From positions 62,001 through 126,000 of the IMG/VR virus record IMGVR_UViG_3300031951_000003: 64,000 nt of DNA; one strand, written 5' to 3'. Numbering within the stretch: position 1 is the first letter of the stretch; every line of letters starts with the position of its first letter. Positions 16,052 to 58,148 of the stretch are shown here, piece after piece. A program made the translations under genes and the position numbers. Below the pieces are notes generated by a model. That model worked only from the letters and a program-made list of their open reading frames with translations. It was not told where the DNA came from and searched no databases.

Positions 16052-16345
16052 ATGTCAGAACAAATCAATGTTGATTTATCACAGAACATACCTAATACCC
16101 TTACCGCTATCGCAGACGCTGAGAGAGCAAAGTTAATTCCAAAAAACGATTTTAATGCGGTTGGGAATGAATACTCATCAGTTAATAGAGACGCTGTTGC
16201 CGACGGTGATTCAATGGGTAGAGGAACGGGAACATTTTTAGATGTTTACAATGTTAATGCAGGAACAATCACAGACATTGTTGAAAGAAAAAATGAAATA
16301 AAAATCAACAAATTCAATTCAAGTAAAACTTACCCTGATTTCTAA
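16052..16345 (+). CDS. Hypothetical protein (97 aa)
   Basis: Tightly coupled ORF in the same operon. Confidence 0.65.
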   Translation: MSEQINVDLSQNIPNTLTAIADAERAKLIPKNDFNAVGNEYSSVNRDAVADGDSMGRGTGTFLDVYNVNAGTITDIVERKNEIKINKFNSSKTYPDF

Positions 16346-16749
16346 TGAATCTAACGAACACACTAAAAGGTTTACTCACGGAGATTGCTTCCATACAAAC
16401 AGTTCAAGATGCTGTCAATGGGAGAAAAGTTTGTGTGATATACTACGATGGTGACGAGCCAGGTGGTAGAGGACTTCGTGAAATAGAGCCCGTGGCTTTA
16501 GGTAAAAGTAAGGCAGGTAATTTAGTCATGAGAGGTTGGGATAGAGAAGGAGCATCTCACACAGGATATAAGGGTGAACAACCTTTACCTGGATGGAGAT
16601 TATTTAGACTTGATAAAATCCTATCTATGAAACCAACAGGTGAAGTTTACAATACTCCGAAACCAAATTATAATTTTAACGGAGATAAGAGTATGGTATC
16701 AGTAATTACGATTGCTAAGTTTGATAATACTCAACCTCAAACAACATAA
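16345..16749 (+). CDS. Stand-alone WYL-domain protein
   Basis: VIYY...REIEPVALG...GNLVMRGWD...WRLFRLDKI matches the WYL pattern. Confidence 0.75.
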   Translation: MNLTNTLKGLLTEIASIQTVQDAVNGRKVCVIYYDGDEPGGRGLREIEPVALGKSKAGNLVMRGWDREGASHTGYKGEQPLPGWRLFRLDKILSMKPTGEVYNTPKPNYNFNGDKSMVSVITIAKFDNTQPQTT

Positions 16750-16753
16750 TTTT

Positions 16754-17359
16754 ATGAACGAGAACGATTTAATGAGTAGATTAGTGGCTTCAAAAGCCAT
16801 AATGGACAGTCCAAAATTCAACCAATCTAGAAATAGTATTAGTGGTGGATTGCCACCAACATCTTTACAAGACTTCGATGTCCCACAAGCAAAATACAAT
16901 ATTCCACAGGAGTATTTACAAGAACAACAATCTGCACCTCTTCTGAGTCAAATCCCAAGAGAAAATACTAAACCTGTTGGAGTTCCTAGTGTCGATGCAA
17001 TCAAGAACTCAAAATTACCTGACGAAATCAAAAGATTAATGATTGAACATCCGATTGCGCAAGCACAACAACAACAAGCAACTCTATCAAATGACTTAGT
17101 AGAAAAAGCTTCAAGATTAATGAAGAGAGAAGATAGTAACTACATTCCTGAATCTGCTAAGAACAAACAAACAACAAAAGTATCCTCAGGTATTGACTAC
17201 AACATGATTCAAAAAATGATTGAAGAGGCCGTAGAGAAAGCATTAGAAAAAAATGGACTTTTGGTTGAAAGTGCAGAAAAAACTAATGAGATTTTCTCTT
17301 TCAAGGTTGGTAAACATATTTTCGAAGGAAAGGTTACAAAGATTAAAAAGTTATCCTAA
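16754..17359 (+). CDS. Hypothetical protein (likely start MNEND at 16754)
   Basis: ATG directly after the WYL stop; Gln/Pro-rich. Confidence 0.65.
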   Translation: MNENDLMSRLVASKAIMDSPKFNQSRNSISGGLPPTSLQDFDVPQAKYNIPQEYLQEQQSAPLLSQIPRENTKPVGVPSVDAIKNSKLPDEIKRLMIEHPIAQAQQQQATLSNDLVEKASRLMKREDSNYIPESAKNKQTTKVSSGIDYNMIQKMIEEAVEKALEKNGLLVESAEKTNEIFSFKVGKHIFEGKVTKIKKLS

Positions 17360-17414
17360 CATATTTCTTTATTCAACATAGATTGTTATATTTCTCCAAT
17401 ATAACAATTTTTTT

Positions 17415-18626
17415 ATGCCCAAAATTAACGTATTAGTTGTCCCATCAGATAGAACAGGTGTTGGCAAATTTAGGTCTGTAGACCCTCACATTTTTCTACA
17501 AAATTTATATCCTGAAGAGTTTCATGTCGATATTATATATGAAGTTCCGTATAACGATGATTCTTTTTGGAAGAAATACCAAATAGTTGCGTTCCATAGA
17601 AGTTTAGGTGCTGATTTCGAAAAAGCCTATGAATTGATTCCGAGATTGAAATCAATGGGAATTAAAACAATATGTGACATCGATGACTATTGGATGCCAG
17701 GTAAGGAACACCCAATCCACGATGTAATAAGATTCAACAAAATAAATGAGAAAATTACAAACAATCTCAAAGTCGCCGAATTTGTTACAACAACTACCTC
17801 AATATTTGCAGACGAAATAAAAAAATTGAACAAAAACGTTTTCGTTTTTCCAAACGCAATTAACCCAACAGAATCACAATTTAAGGAACCAACACCTGAA
17901 TCAGACAGATTACGAGTAGGTTGGCTTGGAGGTTCTTCTCATCTACACGACCTACAGTTGTTAGACCAATCATTCAGTAAGTTATCTAAACTTTCAGACA
18001 AACTACAGTTTGTAATTTGTGGATTTGACACAAGAGGAACAATAACTGAAATCAACCAACAAACAGGAGAACATAAAAAAAGAAACATATTACCACACGA
18101 AACTGTTTGGGCTAATTACGAAAAAATATTCACACAAGATTTCTCTATTGTATCCGAAGAATATAAAAATTATCTTTTGAAATACTCTCAAGAATCTTAC
18201 CCTGAAGAAAACAAAGAATCATATATCAGAGTCTGGACCAAACCAGTTCAGTCATATGCAAAAAACTATTCAAAGTTCGACATATCTTTAGCACCAATTA
18301 AAAATCATATGTTCAACAGAATGAAATCTCAACTTAAAGTAATTGAGGCTGGTTTTTACAAAAAAGCAATAATTGCTTCTAACTTAGGTCCTTATACAAT
18401 AGATTTAAAACACGCTTTAAAAAATGGAGAATTTACAGACGGTAATGCTCTTTTAGTTGAAGAAAATAGAAATCATTCAGATTGGGCTAAGTTTATAGAA
18501 AAATTAGAAAAAAATAGAAATTGGGTTACCGATTTAGGTGAAAGGTTGTATGAAACCGTGAAGGACAAATATGATTTGAACATAGTCACCAAACATAGAG
18601 CAGAGTTTTATAAATCTATATTATGA
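17415..18626 (+). CDS. GT-B (GT4-like) glycosyltransferase
   Basis: DIDDYW, VGWLGGSSH and DISLAPI...KSQLKVIEAG...IIASNLGPY are typical of phage GT4-like enzymes. Confidence 0.8.
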   Translation: MPKINVLVVPSDRTGVGKFRSVDPHIFLQNLYPEEFHVDIIYEVPYNDDSFWKKYQIVAFHRSLGADFEKAYELIPRLKSMGIKTICDIDDYWMPGKEHPIHDVIRFNKINEKITNNLKVAEFVTTTTSIFADEIKKLNKNVFVFPNAINPTESQFKEPTPESDRLRVGWLGGSSHLHDLQLLDQSFSKLSKLSDKLQFVICGFDTRGTITEINQQTGEHKKRNILPHETVWANYEKIFTQDFSIVSEEYKNYLLKYSQESYPEENKESYIRVWTKPVQSYAKNYSKFDISLAPIKNHMFNRMKSQLKVIEAGFYKKAIIASNLGPYTIDLKHALKNGEFTDGNALLVEENRNHSDWAKFIEKLEKNRNWVTDLGERLYETVKDKYDLNIVTKHRAEFYKSIL

Positions 18627-19324
18627 TAAACATTCCACTTAGTAAGATTCTTTTTTTAGATATCGAAACCGTTGGAGTCCAACCCAATTGGGATTCCTTG
18701 GTAAAAAACCAACCAGCGTTGTCTTTCCAATTTGAAAACTATTTTGATTGGTTTCAAAAAAGATTCCCAGAAGATGCGGACAAACCAATCGGTGATATGT
18801 TCGTCAATAGAGCGGCACTTGTCCCTGAGTTTGCAAGAATTGCATGTATAAGTGTTGCATTTGTGACCGAACAAGGTAACACACGAATGCAATCTTTCAG
18901 TGACCCTGATGAGAAAAAGATATTATTTGAAGTTCAGAAACTTTTACAAAAAGTTGGGGAGTTAGGTTTTTTTCTTTGTGGACATAATGTAAAAGGTTTT
19001 GACATTCCAATGTTGGCTAAAAGAATGATTATAAACGGTTTTCAACCACCAAAGATATTACCAGGACACGATACGAAACCTTGGGAAATAAAGGCTTTTG
19101 ACACTAAGGAATTTTGGCAATACGGTGGCTATGGCTCAATTGCATCCTTGGAACTTATGTGTGTATGTTTGGGTGTAGAATCTTCGAAGACCATGGAAAT
19201 TACAGGTAATAAGGTTCATGACGCTTTTTGGGTAAAAAAAGATATTGAAGGTATTGTAAAATATTGTGAGAAAGATGTGTCTGTATTAATTGATGTAATT
19301 AAAAAAATTCAAAAACTTAAATAA
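18623..19324 (+). CDS. PolB-like 3'-5' exonuclease (DEDD)
   Basis: FLDIETV, GHNVKGFDIP and YCEKDV motifs. Confidence 0.85.
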   Translation: MINIPLSKILFLDIETVGVQPNWDSLVKNQPALSFQFENYFDWFQKRFPEDADKPIGDMFVNRAALVPEFARIACISVAFVTEQGNTRMQSFSDPDEKKILFEVQKLLQKVGELGFFLCGHNVKGFDIPMLAKRMIINGFQPPKILPGHDTKPWEIKAFDTKEFWQYGGYGSIASLELMCVCLGVESSKTMEITGNKVHDAFWVKKDIEGIVKYCEKDVSVLIDVIKKIQKLK

Positions 19325-19325
19325 C

Positions 19326-19931
19326 ATGCAAAAAAAAGATGAAGAACTTCTGAAAGAAATCATGGAACAATTCCAAAGGATAAAGGATGAGGTAGGTATG
19401 GAACCTGATGAGAATTACCAACGTGAGTTGGAAGATTTATTTGGGATGTCCATGGAACAAATGAATGCCGACGCAACAATTGCATTACAGACACAAACGG
19501 TTGAGATTGAACTAATTCATGAGGACGCAATCTTTCCATCATATAACTACCCAACTGATTCAGGATTTGATTTATATTCTGTTGATGAAATGACCTTAGA
19601 ACCATTTGGAAGAGGTTTGGTTTCTACTGGTCTAAAGTTCAATTTCGAAGAGGGATATGAAATACAAATAAGAACCAAAAGTGGATTAGCAGTTAATCAA
19701 GGTTTAATGGTCTTAAACTCGCCAGGCACCGTAGACCAAGGATACACAGGGGAAATAAAAGTGCCTGTTTTTAATGCAAACCCAACCAAATTTACAATCT
19801 CAAAAAACATGAAAGTTGCTCAAGCAGTTCTTTGTCCTGTGAAAAACGGAAGATTTGTCAATTTAGTTCCTGTTGATGAGATTGGTCAAAAAGACAGGGG
19901 AGACAATGGTTTTGGAAGCACAGGAATTTAA
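19326..19931 (+). CDS. dut: Trimeric dUTPase with an acidic N-terminal extension
   Basis: SGFDL, RTKSG, GTVDQGYTGEIKV and RGDNGFGSTG motifs. Confidence 0.95.
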   Translation: MQKKDEELLKEIMEQFQRIKDEVGMEPDENYQRELEDLFGMSMEQMNADATIALQTQTVEIELIHEDAIFPSYNYPTDSGFDLYSVDEMTLEPFGRGLVSTGLKFNFEEGYEIQIRTKSGLAVNQGLMVLNSPGTVDQGYTGEIKVPVFNANPTKFTISKNMKVAQAVLCPVKNGRFVNLVPVDEIGQKDRGDNGFGSTGI

Positions 19932-19941
19932 ATTTTTGATA

Positions 19942-20112
19942 ATGGGAAAATACTACGAAAATCTGGACACTTTGATTGAATTAATCAAAAAACTAGAGAG
20001 GAAACATTTGCTCGCTGAGTTTATTTTGGATTGCATCCAAATATCCAAAATTGACCCCAACAAAACACCACACGAAATTATAAAAGAAGCAAAGAAAAAA
20101 AGATTAGGATAA
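19942..20112 (+). CDS. Small hypothetical protein (likely start MGKYY)
   Basis: Fills the gap between dut and the next glycosyltransferase. Confidence 0.5.
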   Translation: MGKYYENLDTLIELIKKLERKHLLAEFILDCIQISKIDPNKTPHEIIKEAKKKRLG

Positions 20113-21740: not shown

Positions 21741-22447
21741 TTATTCTAACCACCACTTTTAACTGCGAACAATTCATTGAAAGGTGTTTGTTGAGTATAA
21801 TGGGTCAAAAATTCAAAGATTTTATATGTTACATAACTGATGATTTATCTACGGATAAAACTAGAGAAATCATCAAAAGGACTATATCTGACGACCCAAG
21901 GTTTATTCTTATTGAAAATCATATCAAGTTTTATCAACCAGGCAACTACGACCAAATAATAAGATGGAGAGGTATTGAAGGGGAAGAAATCTGTGTTGAG
22001 ATTGATGGAGACGATTGGTTACCAAACTCACAAGTTCTGTCCAATATTGCAAAAGTCTATGAAGATAAAAATGTTTGGATGACAAGTGGTTCGTTCAAGT
22101 ATCATGACGGAAGACCAGGTTTTGCAAATCCACCTACGACAAATGTAGATGTAAGAAAACAAGTTTTCACCCTTTCTCACATGAGAACATGGAAATCTTG
22201 GCTTTGGAAAAAAATTGACGAAAAAGACTTGAGAGACGACAAAGGTAACTATTGGGATGTTGCTGGTGACCTATCTTTTATGTTTCCGATGTTTGAAATG
22301 TCAGGTATGGAACATTATAGATTTTTGACCGACATAAATTATATTTACAATGAATCTAACCCACTCAATGACCATAAAGTCAATATGAACAAGGTTATTG
22401 AAACGGTCAATAAAATCAGAAACAAAACCCCCTACACAAAACTATGA
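21737..22447 (+). CDS. GT2 family glycosyltransferase
   Basis: ILTTTFNCEQFIERCL, DDLSTDKT and VEIDGDDW. Confidence 0.85.
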   Translation: MIILTTTFNCEQFIERCLLSIMGQKFKDFICYITDDLSTDKTREIIKRTISDDPRFILIENHIKFYQPGNYDQIIRWRGIEGEEICVEIDGDDWLPNSQVLSNIAKVYEDKNVWMTSGSFKYHDGRPGFANPPTTNVDVRKQVFTLSHMRTWKSWLWKKIDEKDLRDDKGNYWDVAGDLSFMFPMFEMSGMEHYRFLTDINYIYNESNPLNDHKVNMNKVIETVNKIRNKTPYTKL

Positions 22448-23091
22448 GTTTTGATTCAAGTATAGAAAACATTATTTTGGAAATTAACCAAACAAAAAAA
22501 ATAGACAACATCCTCCACATCGGAGCGTGTTTAGGTGAAGAAGTAACTTTTTACAACAGACTCAATCCAAAAAAAGTTTACTGGTTCGAACCAAACCCAA
22601 AACTATTGAGCCAATTAGAAAAAAACCTTGCAGGATATAATTTTGAAAACTCATTATTTCCCTATGCGGTAAGCAATAAGAAAGGAGTTGCTAGTTTCAA
22701 CATAATTGAAAACACATCGAAAACAAACCCAGGATGTTCATCCCTTCAGGATTTGAAAATCCACTTGGAACTTTATCAAGATATACAGAAAGTTGATACT
22801 TGCCAAGTTAATACAATCAACATAGATGAATTCATTTCTGAAAATAATTTAGAGTCTAATTTCGATTTAGTCAGTCTTGATACACAAGGACATGATTTTG
22901 AAATACTTAATTCGAGTGAATTAATTTTTAATGCGAATATAATAGTAATTGAGACGGCTAAAGTAGAATTATACGAAGGTCAGAAAATTGACACAGAAAT
23001 AGATTCATTAATGGAGTCCAAGGGATTTCATAAAAAATACTATCACCAATTTCATAGTGTTTGGGGTGATACTCTATATGTAAAAAATTAA
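22444..23091 (+). CDS. FkbM family SAM-dependent methyltransferase
   Basis: LHIGACLGEE, WFEPNP and LDTQGHDFEIL. Confidence 0.85.
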   Translation: MSFDSSIENIILEINQTKKIDNILHIGACLGEEVTFYNRLNPKKVYWFEPNPKLLSQLEKNLAGYNFENSLFPYAVSNKKGVASFNIIENTSKTNPGCSSLQDLKIHLELYQDIQKVDTCQVNTINIDEFISENNLESNFDLVSLDTQGHDFEILNSSELIFNANIIVIETAKVELYEGQKIDTEIDSLMESKGFHKKYYHQFHSVWGDTLYVKN

Positions 23092-23092
23092 A

Positions 23093-25153: not shown

Positions 25154-25156
25154 AAA

Positions 25157-36770: not shown

Positions 36771-38279
36771 ATGTCAATTTTAAGGTCATATTTCAGTAAA
36801 AATAACACAATTATTTCCAATTCATACGTGAACACAGGACGTAACCCTGTTGTTCAATTGAATTTTGGTGCGTCGGATTACATAGTTCCAAACTATGGAT
36901 ATACACGTTTCATTTTTGATTTAGACCTACAACAACTAAGAGATTCGATTGCAAACGGAACAATTTCGACAGGATGCACATCGGCGATGACACATACACT
37001 TAAGATGACAAACACGTCTTCTTTTGACAACGAGTTACTCAACACCTTTATGTCCGACTCAAGGAGAAGGGCGACCTCATTCGATTTAATATTATTCAGA
37101 ATCCCCAAAACCTCAGGCTCAACAGGTAACCCTCAAGAATGGGATGAAGGGGTTGGATACGATTATAACAATTTTAATTTAGCACAGAACAGTGCACAAG
37201 GTGGTCAATCCCCTTTGACATACGTTGACCCAAGAGCCTTTTCTACAAGACCATCCAATTGGTATCAGACTACCACAATTGATGATTGGTCACAAGCAGG
37301 AATTTACAATAACAAGAATGAGGGCAGTGTTAATTATACGGGTCTTACAGTCGTTTCTAGACAACATTTCGAGTTGGGTAATGAAGACCTCAACATGGAC
37401 ATGACAAACGAAATTAACGGTGTTTTAAACGGTTCTATAACGGGTGTAACAGGTTGGGGTTTAGCATATCTTCCTCAGATTGAAAATATAACAGGTTTGA
37501 CCGATAGTTACAGTGTTGCATTCTTCTCGAGACATACCCAAACTTTCTACCAACCATACCTTTTGACCAATTACGACGATTTGATTCAGGATGATAGAAA
37601 CCAATTTCTGAAGAACCAAGAGAATAGATTATATCTCTACATTTATCAGAATGGTGATTTGGTTAATCTTGATAGTGACCCGTTTGTGAGAATAGAAGAT
37701 AGAGTTGGTGTTGCTGTAACTGGTATGGAGGCATTGACAACTTGTTTAAGAACTAAAGGGGTTTATGAAGTAATTGTTCCGAATGGTTTTACAGGTGCTA
37801 CCCCATGTCAATACTACGATGTTTGGTCAGGATTAACAATTAATGGTCAATCACTTCCAAACGTATCGAATACCTTCACTCTTCAACAATATTCTGCAGG
37901 AATACAAATCGGAACTCTATCCAAAGAACCTCAAAAGTTTGGTTTCAATTTTTACGGGATTCTACAGAACGAACAAATTTTGAATACAGACATTAGAAAG
38001 GTTGGTGTCACAATTAAAAAAGCATACACCGGTCAACAAATGTTATTAGATGTATCAGCATTTTACAGGGTTTATGTCAAAGAAGGAACAACAGAAGTAT
38101 TAGTTCAAGATTGGACACCAATAAACAGAACGCCAAATGAGTATTATTTCATTTTCGATATGAGAGATAAAATTCCTAATCAATATTATGTTGACATTCA
38201 AGTTAACACTTCAGGTGAGAAAGATACTTATAAAAGACAATTAACGTTTAACATAGTAAATCAGAAACAAAATGGCTAA
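36771..38279 (+). CDS. Putative virion structural protein (502 aa)
   Basis: TATTTATA at 36752-36759; beta-rich; YTRFIFDLD motif. Confidence 0.6.
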   Translation: MSILRSYFSKNNTIISNSYVNTGRNPVVQLNFGASDYIVPNYGYTRFIFDLDLQQLRDSIANGTISTGCTSAMTHTLKMTNTSSFDNELLNTFMSDSRRRATSFDLILFRIPKTSGSTGNPQEWDEGVGYDYNNFNLAQNSAQGGQSPLTYVDPRAFSTRPSNWYQTTTIDDWSQAGIYNNKNEGSVNYTGLTVVSRQHFELGNEDLNMDMTNEINGVLNGSITGVTGWGLAYLPQIENITGLTDSYSVAFFSRHTQTFYQPYLLTNYDDLIQDDRNQFLKNQENRLYLYIYQNGDLVNLDSDPFVRIEDRVGVAVTGMEALTTCLRTKGVYEVIVPNGFTGATPCQYYDVWSGLTINGQSLPNVSNTFTLQQYSAGIQIGTLSKEPQKFGFNFYGILQNEQILNTDIRKVGVTIKKAYTGQQMLLDVSAFYRVYVKEGTTEVLVQDWTPINRTPNEYYFIFDMRDKIPNQYYVDIQVNTSGEKDTYKRQLTFNIVNQKQNG

Positions 38280-38742
38280 AGTTGTAAAATTAACCGAATC
38301 AGATATAACCAAGTTGGTTAACAAAGTTCTCAATGAATCATACCAAGAGCATGAAAATTACATGTTTTTTTCTAACCTCAAACAGATTATGAGACAATGT
38401 AAAATGTTGTTGGAGTTTGACCCACAGATGATAGATGAAATTTTACAAAACGGTCACGACTGGGCCGATGACCACGTTACTGAGGCTAAAACCAACATGG
38501 ACCAAGTTTTTGATTTTTTCATGAATGAAAAATCTAAAATGGGAGATTATTTAGATTTCGAAGATTTGAGTGAAGGTAGAAAAAAAACAGGAACTAAACT
38601 TTGTGCAAGAGGTAAGGCAGCGGCTAAGAGTAAATTCAAAGTTTACCCATCAGCTTATGCAAATGGATATGCCGTTCAGGTTTGTAAAGGAAAAATGCCA
38701 GGTTTAGATGGAAAAAAACAATGTTCAGGTGCATATTGTTAA
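38272..38742 (+). CDS. Hypothetical multi-module protein with an LTESD leader and a YPSAYANG module
   Basis: MAKVVKLTESDITKLVNKVLNE leader, HDWADDH segment and KFKVYPSAYANGYAVQVCK C-terminus. Confidence 0.65.
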   Translation: MAKVVKLTESDITKLVNKVLNESYQEHENYMFFSNLKQIMRQCKMLLEFDPQMIDEILQNGHDWADDHVTEAKTNMDQVFDFFMNEKSKMGDYLDFEDLSEGRKKTGTKLCARGKAAAKSKFKVYPSAYANGYAVQVCKGKMPGLDGKKQCSGAYC

Positions 38743-38769: not shown

Positions 38770-39180
38770 ATGGATAACAAAGTTGTTGGTTTCATCCCGA
38801 ATATATTATATAAGGTTTTTTTAGCACTCAAGGAAAAGTTCGACCCCAAAAAACCGTTGCCGGCTGACGAAAGAATCACCTACGAAATATGTAGAAAGGT
38901 CCTTGACGACTCAGATTCAAAATTAACTTTAGCCCCATTATCTAATAAAAGATTTATAAAAAACGAGTCCAAGGATATGTTTATTGTTTTACATGACCAT
39001 AGTGTAAAACTAATAAATCATATATACAGTTATTCCGTGTATATCTCAGACACAAGTCTTTACGTAGAGTTAGTCGAAAAATTTGACAAGAAATTGGATG
39101 ATGAAAGAATGAAACTTGAGATTGAAATCAATAATAATATCAATCATTCTTTAGAGGAAATTTTAAAAAAACTTGATTAG
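38770..39180 (+). CDS. Hypothetical protein (136 aa)
   Basis: TATCTTTG (Bacteroidota -7 type) at 38758-38765, directly upstream. Confidence 0.65.
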   Translation: MDNKVVGFIPNILYKVFLALKEKFDPKKPLPADERITYEICRKVLDDSDSKLTLAPLSNKRFIKNESKDMFIVLHDHSVKLINHIYSYSVYISDTSLYVELVEKFDKKLDDERMKLEIEINNNINHSLEEILKKLD

Positions 39181-40070
39181 TATCTCCCACTAAAATATAC
39201 GTATAATACCTCAGGTATTCTGAAACAACTTTTCTTTTCACCTTTATTGTTTACACAATCTATTGGTTTTAGATTTTTTACAAGTTTTCTCAGTTCATAT
39301 GGGGCTTTACTTGTCATTAGGTAAACCTGTTCAACAGGATATAACAAATTGGGACTATATTCTTCTTTTAAAACCCTCTTAATTAATCCCCTCAAAGATT
39401 CATTTTTTGGTTTATATGAAGTCATTGTTGGTTTGTTACCTGTTCCCATTTTAGGGTCTTTTTTCTCAGCTTTCCTTTTTTGAGCACATGCATTCTTTTT
39501 TTGAGAGTCACTCATTTTTGAAGCAACACCTGCCGCTCTACATTTTGGATATCCCTTACTATCTGCCTCGGGTCTTCCACACGGAGGATGTCCCCCACCT
39601 TCTTTTTTTCTACATATATTTACCCAAGGTCCTTTGGGTTGTTTACTACCTTTTGGTTTCTTTTTTGTCCCAAACCATACCGCTAAATCCTCTTTTAAAA
39701 CTGGTTCATATTCAGTTTTTGGTATATGTGCAATTCTTTTTACTTCTTTGGGTGTTCCAAGGGCATCACTTCCCATGGGTGAATACCCATTTATTGGATT
39801 TCCGTCATCATCGCTTTGTGAAAACATTTCTTTTGCTTTTTTAGCTCTTTTTATTGCCTTCGTTTCGTTTTTTCTTATTAACGTTTGGTCCCTTTCCATT
39901 TCACCATCATAACTATCGTAAGCATTCACCGCACTAACAAAGTTCGATACTGGTTTCGTGAAAGGTTCCAAGGGCTCTTTTTCCCATATTTGGGGTGCAA
40001 GAACTAATGGTATTTTCATTCTACCTGAACTACCTGAACCAGTGGCTTCATTAATGAATCTTTTTTTCAT
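39177..40070 (-). CDS. Hypothetical protein with an EDLAVWFG...YPKC module (likely start MKKRF at 40070)
   Basis: TATTTATA at 40082-40089 (minus) supports the later ATG. Confidence 0.65.
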   Translation of the reverse strand: MKKRFINEATGSGSSGRMKIPLVLAPQIWEKEPLEPFTKPVSNFVSAVNAYDSYDGEMERDQTLIRKNETKAIKRAKKAKEMFSQSDDDGNPINGYSPMGSDALGTPKEVKRIAHIPKTEYEPVLKEDLAVWFGTKKKPKGSKQPKGPWVNICRKKEGGGHPPCGRPEADSKGYPKCRAAGVASKMSDSQKKNACAQKRKAEKKDPKMGTGNKPTMTSYKPKNESLRGLIKRVLKEEYSPNLLYPVEQVYLMTSKAPYELRKLVKNLKPIDCVNNKGEKKSCFRIPEVLYVYFSGRY

Positions 40071-40705: not shown

Positions 40706-41268
40706 ACTTCGTAGGGTTTTGCTTCTTCCACGTCTTTAACTTCTAAAGAACGACCCTTGTTTTGTTTTACAATGAAATAATCATTTGGGGTGTAGGATTC
40801 TCCAGTCTTAAGTTTCTTTCTATTTTTTTTGTATTTGTCTAAAATATCAAAATCATACACAGGACCCAAAGATAATTTTCCGATAGCAGGTAAACCATTT
40901 TCTTTTGTATAGACAACCCAATTACCCTGACTCCTTTCGAAGTTAGTTTTAATCAAAGAGGCAATCATATTCGCGGTTTCGGTTGTCTCATTATTTTCGA
41001 ATGTGGAACCATTCCACCTTAGCGATAACTCAGAAAGTTTCGGTAAACTAAATTCAGTTTTCTCAATGATGTTACTTTTAGGTCTTTTCGCAAAAACATC
41101 ATAGGTATCTCCATTTTTAACCAAATATATTTCCTCCGCCTTGGTAGGTTCCGTTAAGGATGTGTTTCTTGAAAAAATAAAATCATAGTTTTGCTGTTGT
41201 TCATTAATTACTCTATTAACAATTTCCACAAATTCCGATTCCGTTAATCTTATTATTTTCTTGGTCAT
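40702..41268 (-). CDS. Hypothetical protein with an LTESE leader (likely start MTKK at 41268)
   Basis: MTKKIIRLTESEFVEIVNRVINEQ; TATTTATT at 41272-41279 (minus). Confidence 0.65.
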   Translation of the reverse strand: MTKKIIRLTESEFVEIVNRVINEQQQNYDFIFSRNTSLTEPTKAEEIYLVKNGDTYDVFAKRPKSNIIEKTEFSLPKLSELSLRWNGSTFENNETTETANMIASLIKTNFERSQGNWVVYTKENGLPAIGKLSLGPVYDFDILDKYKKNRKKLKTGESYTPNDYFIVKQNKGRSLEVKDVEEAKPYEV

Positions 41269-41286
41269 ATAAATAAATATCATAAT

Positions 41287-41315
41287 AAAAAAAAAGGGTC
41301 CCGAAGGACCCTTTT
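41287..41315 (-). terminator. Rho-independent terminator after the major capsid gene, with a cUUCGg tetraloop
   Basis: Minus strand AAAAGGGTCC-TTCG-GGACCC followed by a T-tract. Confidence 0.9.
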
Positions 41316-41334: not shown

Positions 41335-43146
41335 TTATCTCAACTCTTTCAAATCGAATGTTCTAACACCATCAACTGTGATTCTACCGTAGAATCTGTT
41401 GTTCACCATTTTCTTAGCGTATCTAGTCATGATACCTTTGATTGGTGTGAAGTTGAATGGGTTATACATTGTTGGAGTAAGTTGTAAAGGTACATATGGT
41501 GCGTAAATGTAACCTGTATCAAGAAGCGAAGTTCCTTTGTGACCGATTAACACTTGGTTTGGTGGGAAGTAAGGGTCTCTATAAACTTGGTATCTACCAG
41601 CTAGAGTTCCTACTCTTTCAATACCCATGTTGTATTGGTCTTGCTCAGGAGCTGCGTTTGAAACGTGGAAATATTCTAAATCATCAAAAATCGCAGAGAT
41701 TTCAGAAGATACAACAATCCAGTTAGCACCGCCTCTTAAAGTTGATTTGTGAATTTGAGCTGACAATTGATTGATTGCAGTAATCAACGTTTGGTTCCAG
41801 TCTTTCTGAGTGTAAGAAACTGCGCCAGTTCCACCACCGAGTCTCTTCCAACCGTTGTAATCCCATCTCAAGTTCCATGCTGCACCTTTTCTAAGGTCTC
41901 TCAAGATTTCTCTATCGATTTCAGCCGCAACCTGCTCAGACAATAAAGCTGTCAATTCAGCTTCAGCGTCAATGTTGTGGAATGCTGCAACGTCTTGTGC
42001 CATTTCAGGTGACCATTGTGCTCTTAACTTTCTTTCTGTAACAGAAACAGTTACTGACATAAGGTCAAATGAAACCTCACCAATTTTATCTTCAAATTCT
42101 AAGTTCTTATACAATCTGTAAGTAGCTGAGAACGCTGAGTTTGCAGCTGTTGTTGAAGAGAATGTAGAACCTGTGTAACCGTCCATAGAACCTGTACATG
42201 TAATACATACTGGAACTTGAAGGTCGATTTCAAGATAGATATCACCATTTACATCACAGATGTTGTCATACTGACCACCATCAGTTAATGAACCTGGGAA
42301 ATCTAAAGTAGCGTTGTTGTTACCGTATTGAACGATACCTTTACCATATCTTTGAGTTACTACTCTGAAAAGGTAAGGACCACCACCCGCTGTTGTTGGG
42401 TTAGCAGATACACCGTAGATAGTCAAATCAGACAAGAATGATTCTGTGTCGATTGGGTTACCATCAGGACCGATTAATTTACCTGCTCCGTCAGATGCAA
42501 AACCTGACATGATAACTAATACTTTTCTATAGTTATCTGTTGCGTATGCCGCTGGTTCAAGATTCAAAGTTGTGTTGTTCCACTGAGCTGTTACAACTGA
42601 AGTTATTGCAGATGTTACAGAAGTGAAAGAACCCTTAGAATAATCGAATAAACCTGGTGGGTCTAACGCTGGTTCATTACCCTCATAAAATCTATCATAA
42701 AGGTCTCTACCATTGTTATAGTTGTATCCTGCATTTGGAGATGTTGGACCATCTGGTGCACCGTATGGTGAATAGTGTTGATTAAGACCTGCAGGTGCTG
42801 CTGGGTCATAGCTCTGAATGTTTGGTACAAAGTAGAACAATTTACCGATTGGTAAGTTCATTGCTTGTACTGAAACGATATCGTTAGCCAACAACTTAGA
42901 GAACACTCTTCTCACGATTGGAAATACAACAGTTTCAAATGCACCTGTATCAGATGTAGATGAAGCTTCGTTGATTAAGTGAGAAGCTTGGTTTTCATAA
43001 AGTTGAGCTACGTTTTCTCTCATGTGACCTTTAAGACCCTCTAAGAATCCTAATTTGTCCCATTTGTTGATTGTGTCTTCTTTGATAACTTTAAGGTGCT
43101 TAAGACCGATGTTACCAACAAGACCTGATTCTAATAATGCTCCCAT
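41335..43146 (-). CDS. gp23: Major capsid protein (T4 gp23-like)
   Basis: VSVQAMNLPIGKLFY, RKLRAQWSPEMAQDVAAFHNIDAEAEL, EIDREIL, YAPYVPL and GIMTRYA motifs. Confidence 0.95.
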   Translation of the reverse strand: MGALLESGLVGNIGLKHLKVIKEDTINKWDKLGFLEGLKGHMRENVAQLYENQASHLINEASSTSDTGAFETVVFPIVRRVFSKLLANDIVSVQAMNLPIGKLFYFVPNIQSYDPAAPAGLNQHYSPYGAPDGPTSPNAGYNYNNGRDLYDRFYEGNEPALDPPGLFDYSKGSFTSVTSAITSVVTAQWNNTTLNLEPAAYATDNYRKVLVIMSGFASDGAGKLIGPDGNPIDTESFLSDLTIYGVSANPTTAGGGPYLFRVVTQRYGKGIVQYGNNNATLDFPGSLTDGGQYDNICDVNGDIYLEIDLQVPVCITCTGSMDGYTGSTFSSTTAANSAFSATYRLYKNLEFEDKIGEVSFDLMSVTVSVTERKLRAQWSPEMAQDVAAFHNIDAEAELTALLSEQVAAEIDREILRDLRKGAAWNLRWDYNGWKRLGGGTGAVSYTQKDWNQTLITAINQLSAQIHKSTLRGGANWIVVSSEISAIFDDLEYFHVSNAAPEQDQYNMGIERVGTLAGRYQVYRDPYFPPNQVLIGHKGTSLLDTGYIYAPYVPLQLTPTMYNPFNFTPIKGIMTRYAKKMVNNRFYGRITVDGVRTFDLKELR

Positions 43147-43181: not shown

Positions 43182-44759
43182 TTACCCCAACTTAGACATT
43201 AAGTCTTTCATTCTTAAGAATTGAGGATTTTCGTATGTTTTAGATTCAATCAAATTTGTCGCTGAACCTGATGAAACAGTATTGTTAATTTTCTTTTCAA
43301 CTGATTCGTTGATAGACTTTGATTCAGTCTTACCCAACTCATCTTTGATTGACTTATAAAGAGATTTCGATTCTTTCAATGATTCAACGTCGTCAAATCT
43401 TCTTAGAATATTAATTTTCTCTTTTTTAGTTGTTGAATGTTCTGTAAACAATCTTGTAGCATATGCTAAGTTTGAATTGAAGATTGCAACTTCGTTCAGT
43501 TTTTCTCTGAATACATTAAGCGCTTTTCTATACTCTTCATTTTTCTCTCTCAACATTGTTACTTCAGCTTCTGTAGATTCTACTTTCACACCATTTTTAC
43601 CATAAACAAAGTTTCTGTTTGGTGTAATTTTTCTTAGACCTCTACCTTCTTTTGAACCCATTCCGTAAGTTCTTGCAGCTTCTTTAGTTTCTGCCTTTTT
43701 AATAACTTTGGATTTTCCTTCCATATTTTCGCCTTTCTTGTAGTCGAATTTAGCTTTACCAGTGCCCATTGTTTTAGGACCTTCTTTTTTGTCCTCTTTG
43801 AATCCACCAGCTGCTTTGTCCTTGTATTTGAATTTAGGACCGCTACCAATTCCAACCCCTTTAGGTTTTACTGACATTTTTTTACCCTCTTTAGTCTCAG
43901 ACTTTTTCAAGCCCTTATGAGCTTTTTTGTGGTTGTATGCTTCGTCCAACATATCATCATCTTCTTCGATTTCTTCAGAATCATCCATGTCATCAGATTC
44001 GTCCATCATGTCTTCATCTTCTTCGTCCATTTCTTCAGATTCGTCCATCATGTCTTCATCCTCATCCATTTCTTCAGATTCGTCCATCATGTCTTCATCT
44101 TCTTCTAAAGATGACTCGATGTCAAGTTCAGTGTCCATGGGTTGTTCGTCCATTTCTTCCTCTTCTTCATCGAATTCGATTTCATACATAACTTCTTCTT
44201 CATCTTGGTCAACTTCAAAGTCGTTGCCGTCATTTGAGAAGATTGCGTCAATAACTTTTTGAGTATCAACGTCTTCCATTTCGTCCATTTCCATTTCTTC
44301 TAAGTTTTGGTCTTCTTCAGACTCACCAAGCTTTACAAGATATTCTGTGTCAGCATCGTTATCTTTAAGGTGAATGTCTTCACCATCTTTTTTAACAATA
44401 ATTCCGTCTTCTTCGCCCATAGCTTTGAAGACTCTTAGAATTTCCTCGTCAGAAGCGTCAGTTAAATCTATTGGAGTTTCATCAGAATCCATGTCCATGT
44501 CTAATTCTACATCCATGTCCATTTCATCATCATTATCAGTATCCATCTCGTCGTCTGACTCAACGTCTCCGACTTCCATGTCTACCTCTGCATCAACCTC
44601 TTCTTCATCGTCTTGCTCTGAAAGAGATTCTTTTACTAATTGATTGATTTCTTCCTTCATAGTAGAAGCAAGTATTCCTTTTGCATTTTGGGCAATAGCT
44701 TCTTCAACATTCTTCATTTGAAGAAGAGCCTCTTGTACTAAATTTTTATTTTCTTGCAT
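43182..44759 (-). CDS. Prohead core/scaffold protein
   Basis: Directly upstream of the capsid gene; extremely acidic centre, coiled C-terminus; TATTTATA at 44783-44790 (minus). Confidence 0.75.
   Translation of the reverse strand: MQENKNLVQEALLQMKNVEEAIAQNAKGILASTMKEEINQLVKESLSEQDDEEEVDAEVDMEVGDVESDDEMDTDNDDEMDMDVELDMDMDSDETPIDLTDASDEEILRVFKAMGEEDGIIVKKDGEDIHLKDNDADTEYLVKLGESEEDQNLEEMEMDEMEDVDTQKVIDAIFSNDGNDFEVDQDEEEVMYEIEFDEEEEEMDEQPMDTELDIESSLEEDEDMMDESEEMDEDEDMMDESEEMDEEDEDMMDESDDMDDSEEIEEDDDMLDEAYNHKKAHKGLKKSETKEGKKMSVKPKGVGIGSGPKFKYKDKAAGGFKEDKKEGPKTMGTGKAKFDYKKGENMEGKSKVIKKAETKEAARTYGMGSKEGRGLRKITPNRNFVYGKNGVKVESTEAEVTMLREKNEEYRKALNVFREKLNEVAIFNSNLAYATRLFTEHSTTKKEKINILRRFDDVESLKESKSLYKSIKDELGKTESKSINESVEKKINNTVSSGSATNLIESKTYENPQFLRMKDLMSKLG
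43990..44105. repeat. Three imperfect direct repeats encoding DEDMMDES(E/D) in the scaffold
   Basis: Core cagattcgtccatcatgtcttcatc occurs three times. Confidence 0.8.
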
Positions 44760-45416: not shown

Positions 45417-46133
45417 TTATTTTCCTAAATAATGAGTAAGTTTTTTCATTAAGTCAATAGACTTGTCCTTGGTATCAGTAACTTCTCTTGACTTTTTTTC
45501 CTCCTCCAAATTTTCTTCATATTTAATTCTGTCCTCAGGATTCGTGAACAAGTAAGCACCTGGTGTCGATGGTGATGAAACTAAATCAAAACAAATTAAT
45601 TCAAAATCGTCTTGAACTTCATTTCTTTCCCCTACTTTTTTTAATGAACCAACTCCACGAGATGATATACCCAAAGTAACTCCTTGTCTCATGAGATTTG
45701 CAGCTACGTCACCTTTGGATGATACTATACCTCTCTCATGAAAACCTGGTGTGGTAAGTAATTTTAACTTACCCATCAAAATATTTTTATCCCACCAAAT
45801 GTCTGTAATTAAATGTGATACTCTATCCAAATCAATTAGAGAGGATTCGGGATGGTTCAACTCAGAAGTAGACAAACCCTTAGAAATTATTTTTTTATAA
45901 TTGTCAGCTTCTCTTTTCAGAATTCTTTCAGGATAAAATCTACCGTTCCTATTTGGTGTGTCATACTTTTGTAAAACAGCATAAAACTCAAATGGGTTCT
46001 TATAATCTAATTTTGCAGATTCTTGTAGTATCTTAAAATTATTTTCATCTTTTGGTGAAACATATCCCGCATCCATTTCGATGAGAATACCATGACCGAG
46101 TTCACTTGCTTCTAATATACGTAAATTTTTCAT
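45417..46133 (-). CDS. gp21: Prohead core protease (T4 gp21-like)
   Basis: NRNGRFYP, SELNHPE, LDRVSH, GISSRGVGS and FDLVSSPS. Confidence 0.92.
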   Translation of the reverse strand: MKNLRILEASELGHGILIEMDAGYVSPKDENNFKILQESAKLDYKNPFEFYAVLQKYDTPNRNGRFYPERILKREADNYKKIISKGLSTSELNHPESSLIDLDRVSHLITDIWWDKNILMGKLKLLTTPGFHERGIVSSKGDVAANLMRQGVTLGISSRGVGSLKKVGERNEVQDDFELICFDLVSSPSTPGAYLFTNPEDRIKYEENLEEEKKSREVTDTKDKSIDLMKKLTHYLGK

Positions 46134-46710: not shown

Positions 46711-46896
46711 ATGTTGATTATTAATATAAAAGAAAACGAGAATATCGAAAAGGCACTCAAAACCCTTAAATCAAAAGTAATTAAAACCAAACAGAATCAA
46801 ATTTTGTTTGAAAGAAAAGAATATACCAAACCCTCAATTAAAAAAAGGTCAGAAATACTTAAAGCAATCTACATAGAAAAAAAGAGAAAATCTTAA
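46711..46896 (+). CDS. rpsU: Ribosomal protein bS21 (Bacteroidota-type)
   Basis: MLIINIKENENIEKALK..KSKVIKT...RKEYTKPSIKKR..ILKAIY matches Flavobacterium-type bS21; antisense to the head genes. Confidence 0.9.
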   Translation: MLIINIKENENIEKALKTLKSKVIKTKQNQILFERKEYTKPSIKKRSEILKAIYIEKKRKS

Positions 46897-47591
46897 ATAG
46901 AATTCTCTAAGTCTTTCAATTTCATAAAGTTAATTTGGTCAAATTTTTCATCTTTCAATTTAACAATTGTTTCATTGATTTTTTCTTTGACTTCATTTTC
47001 TTTTTCTTGTTCTAAAATGCTTTCTAATTTTACTATAGTTTTTGTCTTAAGTTCTTCAAACTTATTCTCCAAAGTTTTGTTGTCTTCAGAAATTATTTGA
47101 AAAAATTCCTTTTTGGAATTTTCGTCCATAGTTTCAATAAAATTCATTAAAGTTTGATTCGCAATTTTGACCATGGAACTTACAGGAATATTGATAGATT
47201 CTTTTATTGTATTCATCTCCTCTTTTAGAACTGAAACAATATTTTCTTTAGCCGTAATTCTTTCTTTCAAACTTATGTTTTTAGTATAAACCAAGGTATC
47301 AATATCTTTGTATTTGTTTTCAATACTTTCTTGTAATGACTTAGGCATTTTGATATTCGGTAATATTCTCTGTAGTAGAGAAACTCCTTCTTCCAAAAAT
47401 TCTTTAGCTTGAGATTCTGACAACCCTTGAGGTGAACTCAATTGGTCATAAATTGAGTAGGCTTTTGACAATGATTTATTATTCAAAACATTGTGTTTGA
47501 ATTCTCTAATGTTTTTCTTAAATTGTGCTTCATCTCTGTAAGATTCAAGCAAGTTTTTTTCAATGATTGATTTTACTTTACCGAAAGTCAT
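46893..47591 (-). CDS. Hypothetical head-module protein (232 aa)
   Basis: Follows the portal gene; TATTTATT at 47607-47614 (minus). Confidence 0.7.
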   Translation of the reverse strand: MTFGKVKSIIEKNLLESYRDEAQFKKNIREFKHNVLNNKSLSKAYSIYDQLSSPQGLSESQAKEFLEEGVSLLQRILPNIKMPKSLQESIENKYKDIDTLVYTKNISLKERITAKENIVSVLKEEMNTIKESINIPVSSMVKIANQTLMNFIETMDENSKKEFFQIISEDNKTLENKFEELKTKTIVKLESILEQEKENEVKEKINETIVKLKDEKFDQINFMKLKDLENSI

Positions 47592-56971: not shown

Positions 56972-56992
56972 CCTAAATAAATAGTCAGAGTG

Positions 56993-57235
56993 TTATAGTT
57001 TTTTATATTTGAATTTTTTTGAAATATCAGTTGTGAAAAACTTTCCTTGTGATTCTGATTTTCTGAACTTTGTGTAAATCTGATGTGGAACTTCATCGTA
57101 TTCATATCGAAACCCGTTGTTAAATTCAACAATCATTTTTTTAGTTTCAGTATCATATTCGCTTTTTTTGATATTTGAAGATTTTATTTCATTCAAAATC
57201 TTTGTTCCTTTAATTTCTTCTTTAATTATTGCCAT
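56993..57235 (-). CDS. KTSC domain protein
   Basis: SSNIKKSEYD...LIVEF-like MIVEFNNG..YEYDEVP...SQGKFF. Confidence 0.85.
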   Translation of the reverse strand: MAIIKEEIKGTKILNEIKSSNIKKSEYDTETKKMIVEFNNGFRYEYDEVPHQIYTKFRKSESQGKFFTTDISKKFKYKKL

Positions 57236-57524
57236 TTTCGAGTGGGGTTAATGAATCAATTTTAGATAATTTAGGTTTTAAATAAAGTATGAAATCATCA
57301 TGAGAAACATCAAACCCATAATTTTTTAATTGTTTTTGAAGATTGTCTGCAAGCATGGATATTTCTGCTCTGATTTCAAAAATTCGGATTGGACCAGACG
57401 ATACACTTTCAAGAGACTTATCAGAATAACCTTGTTCTTGAAATATAATTCTAAGTTCCAAGTATTTTTCTAAGATTTCTTGGAAGGAGGAATTATCCTC
57501 AACAAATTTTTTCCATAGTTCCAT
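57222..57524 (-). CDS. Hypothetical protein (100 aa)
   Basis: Coupled to the KTSC gene. Confidence 0.55.
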   Translation of the reverse strand: MELWKKFVEDNSSFQEILEKYLELRIIFQEQGYSDKSLESVSSGPIRIFEIRAEISMLADNLQKQLKNYGFDVSHDDFILYLKPKLSKIDSLTPLENGNN

Positions 57525-57566
57525 ATTGTTAAATAGTTCTGATGATTATTACTATTTACTAATATC

Positions 57567-58148
57567 GTGTCATCTTTAGAAAAAATAATAAAAAAAGTTT
57601 TAATTGAGGTAAGAACCCAAAAAAAAGACGAATTCAATCGTGGTATGGAACATAGAATATATGCATCCAAATCTAACCCCGATAGACTATTCAAAGTGGG
57701 AGATGAGGGTGTAGGATATTGGGTCGAAGTATTCCGTTCAAATCCTGATATTTTTGCACAAGTTTACAGAACAGGAAAATTGGATAAATGGAATTATTAC
57801 GCCGAGATAGAAAAATTGGAAACAAATAGGGTTTTAAACGAATGGCAACAAATTGAAGAAAAATTAGAAGAAATTGGAATTATCGATTCTGAAGATGGTT
57901 CATACGGAAGAGATATTACCGACATATACACCAATCATGGGCATGACCAAAAAACAATAACAGAAATTTCAGAGAAACTGAGAGATTACGACAAACAAAC
58001 CTATAGTCTTTTTATCAAATATTTTAAACTTTTCAAAGATTGTGAAAGAGCTATTGAAAAAATTGTTGGTCATGAGACACTTGTTGATGCACATCGTTAC
58101 AATTTTGGTTATAGTAAGGATGGTAAATTGAAATGTTTGGACATATAA
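57567..58148 (+). CDS. Minimal protein-kinase-like protein
   Basis: RGMEHRIY (Gly loop-like), LFKV (catalytic Lys), DAHRYNFG (catalytic loop) and CLDI (metal-binding Asp) at the C-terminus; GTG start. Confidence 0.6.
   Translation: MSSLEKIIKKVLIEVRTQKKDEFNRGMEHRIYASKSNPDRLFKVGDEGVGYWVEVFRSNPDIFAQVYRTGKLDKWNYYAEIEKLETNRVLNEWQQIEEKLEEIGIIDSEDGSYGRDITDIYTNHGHDQKTITEISEKLRDYDKQTYSLFIKYFKLFKDCERAIEKIVGHETLVDAHRYNFGYSKDGKLKCLDI

What the first reader, a model, noticed from the sequence alone, without database searches (positions are those of the whole stretch)
16345..58148. Shared N-terminal helix ending in (L/I/V)-x-E on unrelated late proteins: candidate capsid-targeting/cleavage leaders
Seen: MAKVVKLTESDITKLVNKVLNE|S (38272), MTKKIIRLTESEFVEIVNRVINE|Q (41268), SLEKIIKKVLIE|V (kinase, 57567), MNLTNTLKGLLTE|I (WYL, 16345), MKKRFINE|A (40070) and KSIIEKNLLE|S (47591), alongside LLE|S in the capsid protein and ILE|A in the protease. 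Known: T4 gp21 cleaves after Glu in (L/I)xE-type sites and removes capsid-targeting leaders from internal proteins. Inference: a set of cargo proteins, including enzymes, is packaged in the head and ejected into the host.
Basis: inference. Interest (0 to 1): 0.6.

Follow-up and report, generated by a model that had tools for sequence, protein, structure and literature searches.

The report
Shared capsid-targeting-like leader on phage proteins
A jumbo freshwater phage with a T4-type head carries one conserved 22-residue N-terminal helix, ending in the cut-site motif of its head protease, on many unrelated small proteins, which most likely marks them for packaging into the capsid, as in phage T4, though no experiment shows this yet.

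Summary
The proteins starting at 38272 (+) and 41268 (-) share a homologous N-terminal leader, M-x-K-I-I-[KR]-L-T-E-S-D-L-x-R-[LI]-V-K-[KR]-V-[ILVM]-x-E. The 321-kb genome has 12-14 such genes, always at residue 1. Five complete relatives have 7-16 each. Across IMG/VR the leader sits on 260 distinct proteins in 162 unrelated cargo clusters.

- **Level of conservation:** it is at the protein level, since synonymous changes abound.
- **Final Glu:** the Glu, and the aliphatic residue two positions before it, are invariant in 117 of 117 leaders collected without constraining them. The residues flanking the Glu vary, and conservation stops at it.
- **Protease and capsid:** the genome encodes a gp21-type (S77) prohead protease. 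The gp23-type capsid protein has a conserved 60-residue N-terminus ending L-I-N-E.
- **Other leaders:** three further leader families (B, C, D) exist, and one cargo occurs with leader A or D.

Best reading (about 0.55): a T4-style capsid-targeting propeptide. Packaging and cleavage are inferred, not shown.

The WYL example looks like chance, and the "kinase" label is unsupported. This is a new variant of a known kind.

The parts
38272..38337 (+). Leader A, copy 1 (22 codons, Met to the invariant Glu) of the 156-aa protein 38272-38742
   Evidence: Leader profile E 4.8e-11. Orthologues in 15 related contigs keep the leader, and insertions/deletions begin right after the Glu. The cargo has a Cys-rich basic C-terminus (phrog_27331). 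The AlphaFold model is poor, pLDDT 48.
41200..41268 (-). Leader A, copy 2 (23 codons) of the 188-aa protein 40702-41268, the gene directly downstream of the major capsid gene
   Evidence: Leader profile E 6.3e-11. The start at 41268 is set by homology to the other leaders. The cargo has no Pfam or PHROG match and only three close homologues in the word-based search of 5.8 billion sequences.
41273..41280 (-). Promoter-like box A-T-A-T-T-T-A-T, 4 nt upstream of the ATG of the 41268 gene
   Evidence: Read. [AGT]TATTTAT lies within 60 nt upstream of 12 of 14 leader-A genes, against 83 of 411 genes overall (odds ratio 27, p 1.5e-7). It also precedes the protease gene and the 232-aa gene.
41287..41311 (-). 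Hairpin plus T-run (terminator-like) between the capsid gene stop and the 41268 gene
   Evidence: Read. Similar hairpins precede several other leader genes, so each looks like its own transcription unit.
39177..40070 (-). 297-aa head-module protein ('p311'). It has an N-terminal short phi-x-E (40047-40070) and an internal leader-like helix at 39363-39386 followed by a 60-aa extension.
   Evidence: Orthologues keep phi-x-E then [AT]-T near the N-terminus, and most end in the leader-like helix. In the window copy and in two relatives an extra domain follows the helix.
41335..43146 (-). Major capsid protein, gp23 type. Predicted maturation site L-I-N-E60, followed by A61 (codons at 42967-42978).
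   Evidence: Pfam Gp23 4e-71 and PHROG 138. Residue 71 aligns with T4 gp23 residue 92. The first 60 residues are nearly invariant in 8 relatives, followed by a variable Ser/Thr/Gly-rich stretch. The site itself is inferred.
45417..46133 (-). Prohead protease, T4 gp21 type (Peptidase S77)
   Evidence: Pfam PF03420 1e-21, PHROG 207 6e-43, PDB 5JBL (T4 gp21) 3.7e-13. The H-P-E and S-S-R-G stretches align with T4 and are invariant in 9 clade sequences.
46893..47591 (-). 232-aa helical, Glu/Lys-rich protein with 14 [LIVM]xE motifs; scaffold-like core protein
   Evidence: It lies between the portal and protease genes, where the T4 core genes sit. No family match.
43182..44759 (-). 525-aa very acidic protein with a basic C-terminal third and 25 [LIVM]xE motifs; second scaffold-like or core candidate directly upstream of the capsid gene
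   Evidence: Conserved at both ends in relatives. No family match.
57585..57608 (+). Half-leader (8 residues ending in Glu) at residues 7-14 of the 193-aa protein 57567-58148; doubtful member
   Evidence: Matches the half-leader pattern but not the full profile (E 24). GTG start. No kinase or other domain found. Found only in one near-identical relative.

Best explanation
Leader A is a capsid-targeting propeptide of the T4 internal-protein type. The same probably holds for leader families B and D and for the shorter half-leader.

Proposed mechanism:
1. The N-terminal strand plus amphipathic helix docks the protein onto the scaffolding core while the prohead forms.
2. The gp21-type protease then cuts after the invariant Glu. 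It probably also cuts after the earlier L-T-E.
3. The cargo is freed inside the head and later leaves with the DNA.

Shown here:
- the leader family and its strict N-terminal position
- selection at the protein level
- the invariant phi-x-E end
- the unrelated cargos
- the presence of the protease and the T4-type head module

Inferred: docking, cleavage, packaging and ejection.
For: (1) T4-type head module with an S77 protease whose T4-aligned H-P-E and S-S-R-G stretches are invariant in the clade.

(2) There are 12-14 leader-A genes in this genome, all starting at residue 1. Five complete clade genomes have 7-16 each.

(3) Leader codons differ at the third position in 55% of comparisons against 16% at the second, so the peptide is what is conserved.

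(4) A scan that left the end of the leader free gave 117 distinct leaders. Glu16 of the core was present in 117/117 and I/L/V/M two residues before it in 117/117. The residues on either side varied. Met lay 6 residues upstream in 104/117, and there was no conservation after the Glu. This is the L/I-x-E rule of gp21 (PMC9026906).

(5) 260 distinct leader proteins fall into 162 cargo clusters. Own-genome cargos are mutually unrelated except one pair.

(6) One cargo family occurs with leader A or with leader D (P0076). Families A, B and D all end in phi-x-E, and leaders carry about two such motifs each: 57 observed against 27 +/- 4 in shuffles.

(7) The capsid protein's conserved N-terminal 60 residues end in L-I-N-E, like the leaders.

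(8) The AlphaFold model of a 118-aa member has a helix at 10-26, low confidence at 23-31 starting at the Glu, then a confident separate domain.

(9) The leader is virtually absent from 185,579 prokaryote genomes (1 hit) and from the nearest outgroup phages.

(10) Leader genes share an upstream box with the protease gene and the scaffold-like gene.

(11) T-even internal proteins likewise share only a packaging leader (PMC12373910, PMC3012670).
Against: - There is no proteomic or other experimental evidence for this clade. No cultured relative was found.
- All leader-bearing contigs belong to one clade, so co-occurrence with the protease (13/23 records, 4/4 complete) cannot discriminate between explanations.
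- An invariant Glu could also be a contact residue of an uncleaved docking helix.
- Many family C leaders lack a terminal phi-x-E.
- In the p311 family the helix is C-terminal or internal, which is not the classical T4 arrangement.
- If all families count, about 9% of genes would be cargo, which is a lot.
- The upstream box resembles the general Bacteroidetes -7 promoter element, so it does not prove late timing.
- RNA contigs give only one exact 226-nt piece inside the 41268 gene.
- Cargo pI does not differ from the proteome.
Confidence: 0.55

Rival explanations
1. Uncleaved docking or anchor helix. The leader attaches diverse small proteins to a common hub and stays on the mature protein. 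The hub could be the virion surface, the tail or baseplate, or a phage-made assembly in the cell.
For: Modular use on unrelated cargos. Amphipathic helix separated from the cargo by a linker. The helix also occurs at the C-terminus or internally in the p311 family. A few cargos carry peptidoglycan-binding or OmpA-like domains, which would also suit external virion proteins.
Against: The strict Glu (never Asp) in 117/117, with variable neighbours and an abrupt end of conservation, is what a gp21-type site predicts. It is more than a helix surface needs. Four different leader families converge on phi-x-E.
Confidence: 0.2
2. Intracellular function unrelated to the virion. The helix would be an oligomerisation, regulatory or host-target-binding module of a fast-evolving set of accessory proteins, for example anti-defence proteins acting after synthesis in the cell.
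For: The genes lie mostly in a variable region of small single-gene units, each with its own promoter-like box and hairpin. The cargos are orphans.
Against: It does not explain the fixed position at residue 1. It does not explain the phi-x-E convergence of unrelated leader families, or the resemblance to the capsid protein's predicted maturation site.
Confidence: 0.15
3. A nucleic-acid signal rather than a peptide: a conserved 5' coding region serving translation by ribosomes carrying the phage bS21, or a recombination cassette.
For: The clade encodes bS21 (PMC9723584). The ATG lies only a few bases from a conserved upstream box.
Against: Third codon positions differ in 55% of pairwise comparisons while the amino acids are kept: 236 synonymous-different against 303 identical codon pairs.
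Confidence: 0.03
4. Chance resemblance of short Glu-ended hydrophobic stretches in an AT-rich, Lys/Glu/Ile-rich proteome.
For: Generic [LIVM]xE is common (1.7 per 100 residues internally) and only 1.5-fold enriched in N-termini. This fits the WYL example and perhaps 57567.
Against: Profile E-values of 1e-9 to 1e-13 within the genome, all at start codons. More than 250 distinct copies in related contigs.
Confidence: 0.02

Closest known systems
Capsid targeting sequence (CTS) of T4 and T-even internal proteins IPI, IPII, IPIII (and the Alt propeptides), removed by gp21
   Same: N-terminal short propeptide. It ends in L/I-x-E. It is the only similarity among otherwise unrelated small proteins. 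The genes sit in variable loci. A gp21-type protease, a gp23-type capsid protein and a gp20-type portal are encoded together (PMC9026906, PMC3012670, PMC12373910).
   Different: 22-23 residues instead of 10-19, with no evident sequence relation to the T4 CTS (not formally tested). Many more genes per genome (7-16 for leader A alone, against 3 in T4). At least three further leader families. Leader-like helices also occur at C-termini. The host is Bacteroidota. There is no experimental proof.
Propeptides of phiKZ / SPN3US inner-body and ejection proteins, cut by gp175/gp245 (distant gp21 homologues)
   Same: Jumbo phages. Many head proteins are cut after Glu at a short motif, often at several sites within a propeptide (PMC9026906, PMC10052503).
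   Different: Those propeptides are long and are not a shared, alignable leader. Here a single 22-residue sequence is reused. Only one family C protein gives a weak, sub-threshold match to PF12699 (E 0.0013).
Encapsulin cargo-loading peptides
   Same: A short conserved terminal peptide directs unrelated cargo into an HK97-fold shell.
   Different: Those peptides are usually C-terminal, are not cleaved and bind the shell protein. No protease is involved.

Membership tests
T4-type capsid targeting sequence / internal proteins | Short propeptide at the extreme N-terminus | tested here: met
   All 12 profile hits in the genome start at the initiator Met. Met lies 6 residues before L-T-E in 104 of 117 unbiased copies.
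T4-type capsid targeting sequence / internal proteins | Propeptide ends in the gp21 site (L/I)-x-E | tested here: met
   I/L/V/M-x-E in 117 of 117 copies collected without constraining these positions.
T4-type capsid targeting sequence / internal proteins | Genome encodes a gp21-type (S77) prohead protease and a gp23-type shell | tested here: met
   PF03420 1e-21, PDB 5JBL 3.7e-13, PF07068 4e-71.
T4-type capsid targeting sequence / internal proteins | The leader is the only similarity among the proteins that carry it | tested here: met
   162 cargo clusters among 260 proteins. Own-genome cargos are unrelated except one pair.
T4-type capsid targeting sequence / internal proteins | Proteins are present in the head, the leader is removed, and the proteins are ejected | not testable with these tools
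   No virion proteome exists for this clade. The complex prediction gave no verdict.
T4-type capsid targeting sequence / internal proteins | Sequence homology to the T4 CTS | not tested
   The T4 leader is too short for a search and was not available by reference.
phiKZ-like internal head proteins (PF12699) | Match to the family profile above its cut-off | tested here: not met
   Only one family C protein matched, at 18.5 bits against a cut-off of 27. Leader A proteins gave none.
Sec or lipoprotein signal peptide | Uncharged hydrophobic core of about 10-15 residues after a basic N-region | tested here: not met
   The leader alternates charged and aliphatic residues. True signal peptides in this genome look different, e.g. 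the ORF at 40241-40705.
   No Pfam or PHROG family.
WYL domain protein (16345-16749) | Match to PF13280 above its cut-off | tested here: met
   22.4 bits against a cut-off of 21.8, residues 17-96. This is marginal, and it has no bearing on a leader.

The most novel reading that the evidence does not exclude
This clade of uncultured Bacteroidota jumbo phages runs a large, exchangeable address-tag system. At least four N-terminal leader families (A-D, plus a half-leader) all end in the prohead-protease motif. They load some 30-40 proteins per genome, about 9% of genes and well over a hundred cargo families across the clade, into the head for delivery into the host. The cargos include enzymes such as a PPK2. 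Tags are swapped between cargos. If so, the leader is a sequence handle for finding injected effectors in phages that have never been grown.
Probability: 0.4. Interest if true: 0.7.

Novelty: new variant of a known kind. Interest (0 to 1): 0.6.

Why it matters
Proteins injected with phage DNA act before any phage gene is expressed. In T4 they are specific inhibitors of host restriction systems. For uncultured jumbo phages there is no way to tell which of hundreds of orphan genes are such proteins.

A leader that can be recognised from sequence alone would give a ready list of candidate packaged effectors in an abundant freshwater phage clade. It would also show that the T4 targeting-and-trimming logic extends far beyond enterobacterial phages, and at much larger scale. 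It would offer a tag for loading foreign proteins into these capsids. All of this depends on a proteomic or biochemical test that has not been done.

Tried and rejected
- **Complex prediction:** protease (residues 20-200) with the first 45 residues of a leader protein gave no verdict (score 0.02). It is not evidence either way.
- **Structure of the 38272 protein:** too uncertain to use (pLDDT 48).
- **Fold search:** the well-modelled cargo of the 118-aa member gave no significant match, only weak leucine-rich-repeat-like rows.
- **Family scans:** Pfam and PHROGs found nothing for either in-window cargo, apart from an unnamed PHROG on the Cys-rich tail of 38272.
- **The search for related loci:** DNA patterns were used instead.
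- **Phage collection searches:** blastn of the head region found nothing. tblastn of a leader protein found nothing meaningful.
- **RNA contigs:** four metatranscriptomes cover the capsid gene heavily. They give only single exact pieces in the 41268 gene and the p311 gene, too little to claim expression.
- **Cargo charge:** pI equals that of the proteome, so there is no sign of T4-like basic proteins.
- **Protein Atlas:** returned only viral 'hypothetical protein' clusters.
- The analysis was redone from files.
- **Rejected ideas:** a DNA or RNA element, a host-type sorting signal, and one diverged paralogous family.
Full report
**What the window is**

The window is bases 62001-126000 of a complete 321,139-bp phage genome with direct terminal repeats and 35% G+C. 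On the minus strand it carries a T4-type head module, in this order:
- large terminase, 49491-51248
- gp20-type portal, 47615-49453
- a 232-aa helical protein
- a ribosomal protein bS21 gene on the opposite strand, at about 46720-46872
- a 149-aa protein
- a gp21-type S77 prohead protease, 45417-46133
- a 525-aa very acidic protein
- a gp23-type major capsid protein, 41335-43146

The bS21 gene sits antisense inside the head module. Together with the genome size, this places the phage in the bS21-encoding freshwater jumbo phages predicted to infect Bacteroidetes (PMC9723584). That paper does not mention N-terminal leaders. The nearest capsid proteins in the phage collection are only 37-45% identical: an uncultured huge phage, Microcystis phage Mel-JY01, Flavobacterium phage immuto and RM378.

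**Checking the observation**

A profile built from the genome's own copies shows that only two of them are significantly alike, 38272 (+) and 41268 (-). The same leader heads at least 12 proteins in the genome, and up to 14 with two weaker copies. In every case it lies directly behind the start codon.

The core is M-x-K-I-I-[KR]-L-T-E-S-D-L-x-R-[LI]-V-K-[KR]-V-[ILVM]-x-E.

The other examples score at chance level with the full profile. A shorter 'half-leader', the last eight residues, is 12.8-fold enriched in N-termini (17 against 7 internal, p 3e-9). It includes the 57567 protein.

The N-terminus at 40070 belongs to a conserved head-module protein. All its orthologues keep a phi-x-E followed by [AT]-T, and several have a clear half-leader there. 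The peptide at 47591 is the start of a scaffold-like protein with 14 [LIVM]xE motifs. The WYL protein shows nothing. Generic [LIVM]xE is only 1.5-fold enriched in N-termini.

**Peptide signal or DNA element?**

Among the leader codons of the core set, third positions differ in 55% of pairwise comparisons, against 16% for second positions. There are 236 synonymous-but-different codon pairs against 303 identical ones. The peptide is therefore what is conserved.

**One leader, many cargos**

Behind the leader, the genome's own proteins are unrelated to each other except for one pair.

The loci they returned hold 260 distinct complete leader proteins. These fall into 162 cargo clusters at BLAST E<1e-4, with cargo lengths of 44-482 residues and a median of 110.

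The contigs are fragments of phages of about 300 kb by CheckV. The S77 protease was found in 13 of 23 records and in all 4 complete ones. The leader profile finds 11, 8, 7, 8 and 16 copies in five complete genomes of the clade. It finds none in immuto or Mel-JY01 and one weak hit in the uncultured huge phage LR756508. The leader pattern has a single match in 185,579 prokaryote genomes, on a 3.4-kb contig of a metagenome-assembled genome. The leader is thus a clade-specific phage invention, not a host sorting signal.

**The end of the leader**

The second scan constrained only the first 13 residues of the core, and gave 117 distinct leaders:
- the Glu at core position 16 is present in 117 of 117
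- the residue two before it is I/L/V/M in 117 of 117
- the residue between them is K, N, S, R, E, Q, M or L
- the residue after the Glu is Q, N, E, S, D or G
- nothing is conserved beyond the Glu

In orthologue alignments, insertions and deletions begin right after the Glu.

The AlphaFold model of a 118-aa member has a helix at 10-26. Confidence is low from residue 23, which is the Glu, to residue 31. A confident separate domain follows.

This is the (L/I)-x-E-then-cut rule established for T4 gp21. In the T4 targeting sequence, the N-terminal residues serve targeting and residues 8 and 10 serve processing. Asp in place of the Glu blocks processing (PMC9026906).

The leader also contains a second invariant motif, L-T-E. 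Over three leader families the genome's leaders carry 57 [LIVM]xE motifs, against 27 +/- 4 in composition-preserving shuffles. Copies within a family are not independent, so this amounts to about three independent observations.

**Other leader families and swapping**

The genome has further N-terminal families, mostly in the region 121-156 kb in window coordinates:
- **Family B:** M-N-L-N-E-N-I-x-R-[VI]-K-E-x-M-G then phi-phi-x-E; 7-8 genes.
- **Family C:** M-K-Y-I-I-T-E-S-Q-L...; at least 10 genes. Some end in phi-x-E and some do not.
- **Family D:** two genes, ending L-L-K-E.

An orthologue of the 118-aa cargo, P0076, carries leader D instead of leader A. So leaders are exchangeable modules.

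A family B leader heads a PPK2 polyphosphate kinase (E 1.4e-70). Another heads a weak phosphatase-like protein. One family C protein gives a sub-threshold match to phiKZ internal head proteins.

Among the 60 largest leader-A cargo representatives, only three had a Pfam domain: peptidoglycan-binding, OmpA-like and a weak annexin.

**Head proteins**

The capsid protein's first 60 residues are almost invariant in eight relatives and end in L-I-N-E. A variable Ser/Thr/Gly-rich stretch follows. Residue 71 aligns with T4 gp23 residue 92, so the T4 cut at residue 65/66 falls around residues 45-61 here. I take L-I-N-E60 followed by A61 as the likely maturation site. It resembles the leader ends (V-I-N-E, V-L-N-E in the window).

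The protease's I-L-E8 is not conserved in relatives, while G-I-L-[IV]-E19 is.

**Expression context**

Twelve of 14 leader-A genes have [AGT]TATTTAT within 60 nt upstream of the ATG, often only about 4 nt before it. Overall 83 of 411 genes have it (odds ratio 27, p 1.5e-7). Half of all copies lie in the 4.5% of the genome that is intergenic. The box also precedes the protease gene and the 232-aa gene.

The box resembles the Bacteroidetes -7 promoter element (my own knowledge). It therefore fits co-expression with head genes but does not prove late timing.

The 41268 gene follows the capsid gene's hairpin terminator and has its own box.

Metatranscriptome contigs cover the capsid gene densely. 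They give only one exact piece each in the 41268 and p311 genes.

**Verdict**

The best explanation is a T4-style capsid-targeting and cleavage leader, reused on a very large and fast-changing set of small proteins (confidence about 0.55).

The main rival is an uncleaved docking helix (0.2). It is favoured by the C-terminal or internal copies in the p311 family. It is disfavoured by the strict Glu and by the convergence of unrelated leaders on phi-x-E.

Packaging, cleavage and ejection remain inferences, and the complex prediction gave no verdict.

The system is a new variant of a known kind. As far as the searched literature shows, it has not been described for this clade.

Noticed in passing
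window 46711-46896 (+): A ribosomal protein bS21 gene (PF01165, 39.9 bits) lies antisense between the scaffold-like 232-aa gene and the 149-aa gene of the head module. This is the hallmark of the bS21 jumbo phages of Chen et al. 2022.
   Followed up: partly
genome-wide; e.g. window 41273-41280 (-), 46154 (-), 47615 (-): The box [AGT]TATTTAT occurs 170 times, 86 of them in the 4.5% intergenic DNA. It usually sits about 4 nt, and in other cases up to some 30 nt, before the ATG of 83 genes. It resembles the Bacteroidetes -7 promoter element and would give very short or no 5' leaders. That may bear on why the phage carries its own bS21.
   Followed up: partly
G000 genome 165560-166666 (window coordinate 103560-104666, outside the window; locus L227:563-1666 -): A PPK2 polyphosphate kinase (E 1.4e-70) carries a leader of family B and about 125 extra N-terminal residues.
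   Followed up: partly
window coordinates 121000-156000 (loci L002, L003): A variable region is packed with small single-gene units. Each has a hairpin, the upstream box and one of four N-terminal leader families (A-D).
   Followed up: partly
window 39177-40112 (-) and relatives L126, L127: The conserved head-module protein normally ends in a leader-like helix. In this genome and in two relatives the helix is followed by different extra domains. In L126 a full leader A with its own Met lies in frame, as if a downstream leader gene had been fused.
   Followed up: partly
window 38590-38739 (+) and 39500-39700 (-): A Lys/Cys-rich basic segment (phrog_27331, phrog_23735; motif P-S-A-Y-A-N-G-Y) ends the 38272 protein. 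A similar Cys/Lys-rich stretch lies in the middle of the neighbouring p311 protein. Its function is unknown; it may bind metal or DNA.
   Followed up: no
window 40241-40705 (+): An ORF opposite to its neighbours, between p311 and the 41268 gene, has an internal Met followed by a typical Bacteroidetes-style signal peptide. It is a secreted protein or lipoprotein candidate inside the head region.
   Followed up: no
window 17415-27907 (+): A glycosyltransferase (phrog_7162, 1e-45) and a nucleotide-sugar epimerase (phrog_540, 6e-80) lie in the plus-strand block. This points to a sugar-modification cluster.
   Followed up: no
window 43182-44759 (-): The 525-aa protein upstream of the capsid gene has about 200 residues of almost pure Asp/Glu/Met repeats and a basic C-terminal third. 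Its length varies strongly among relatives (455-549 aa).
   Followed up: no
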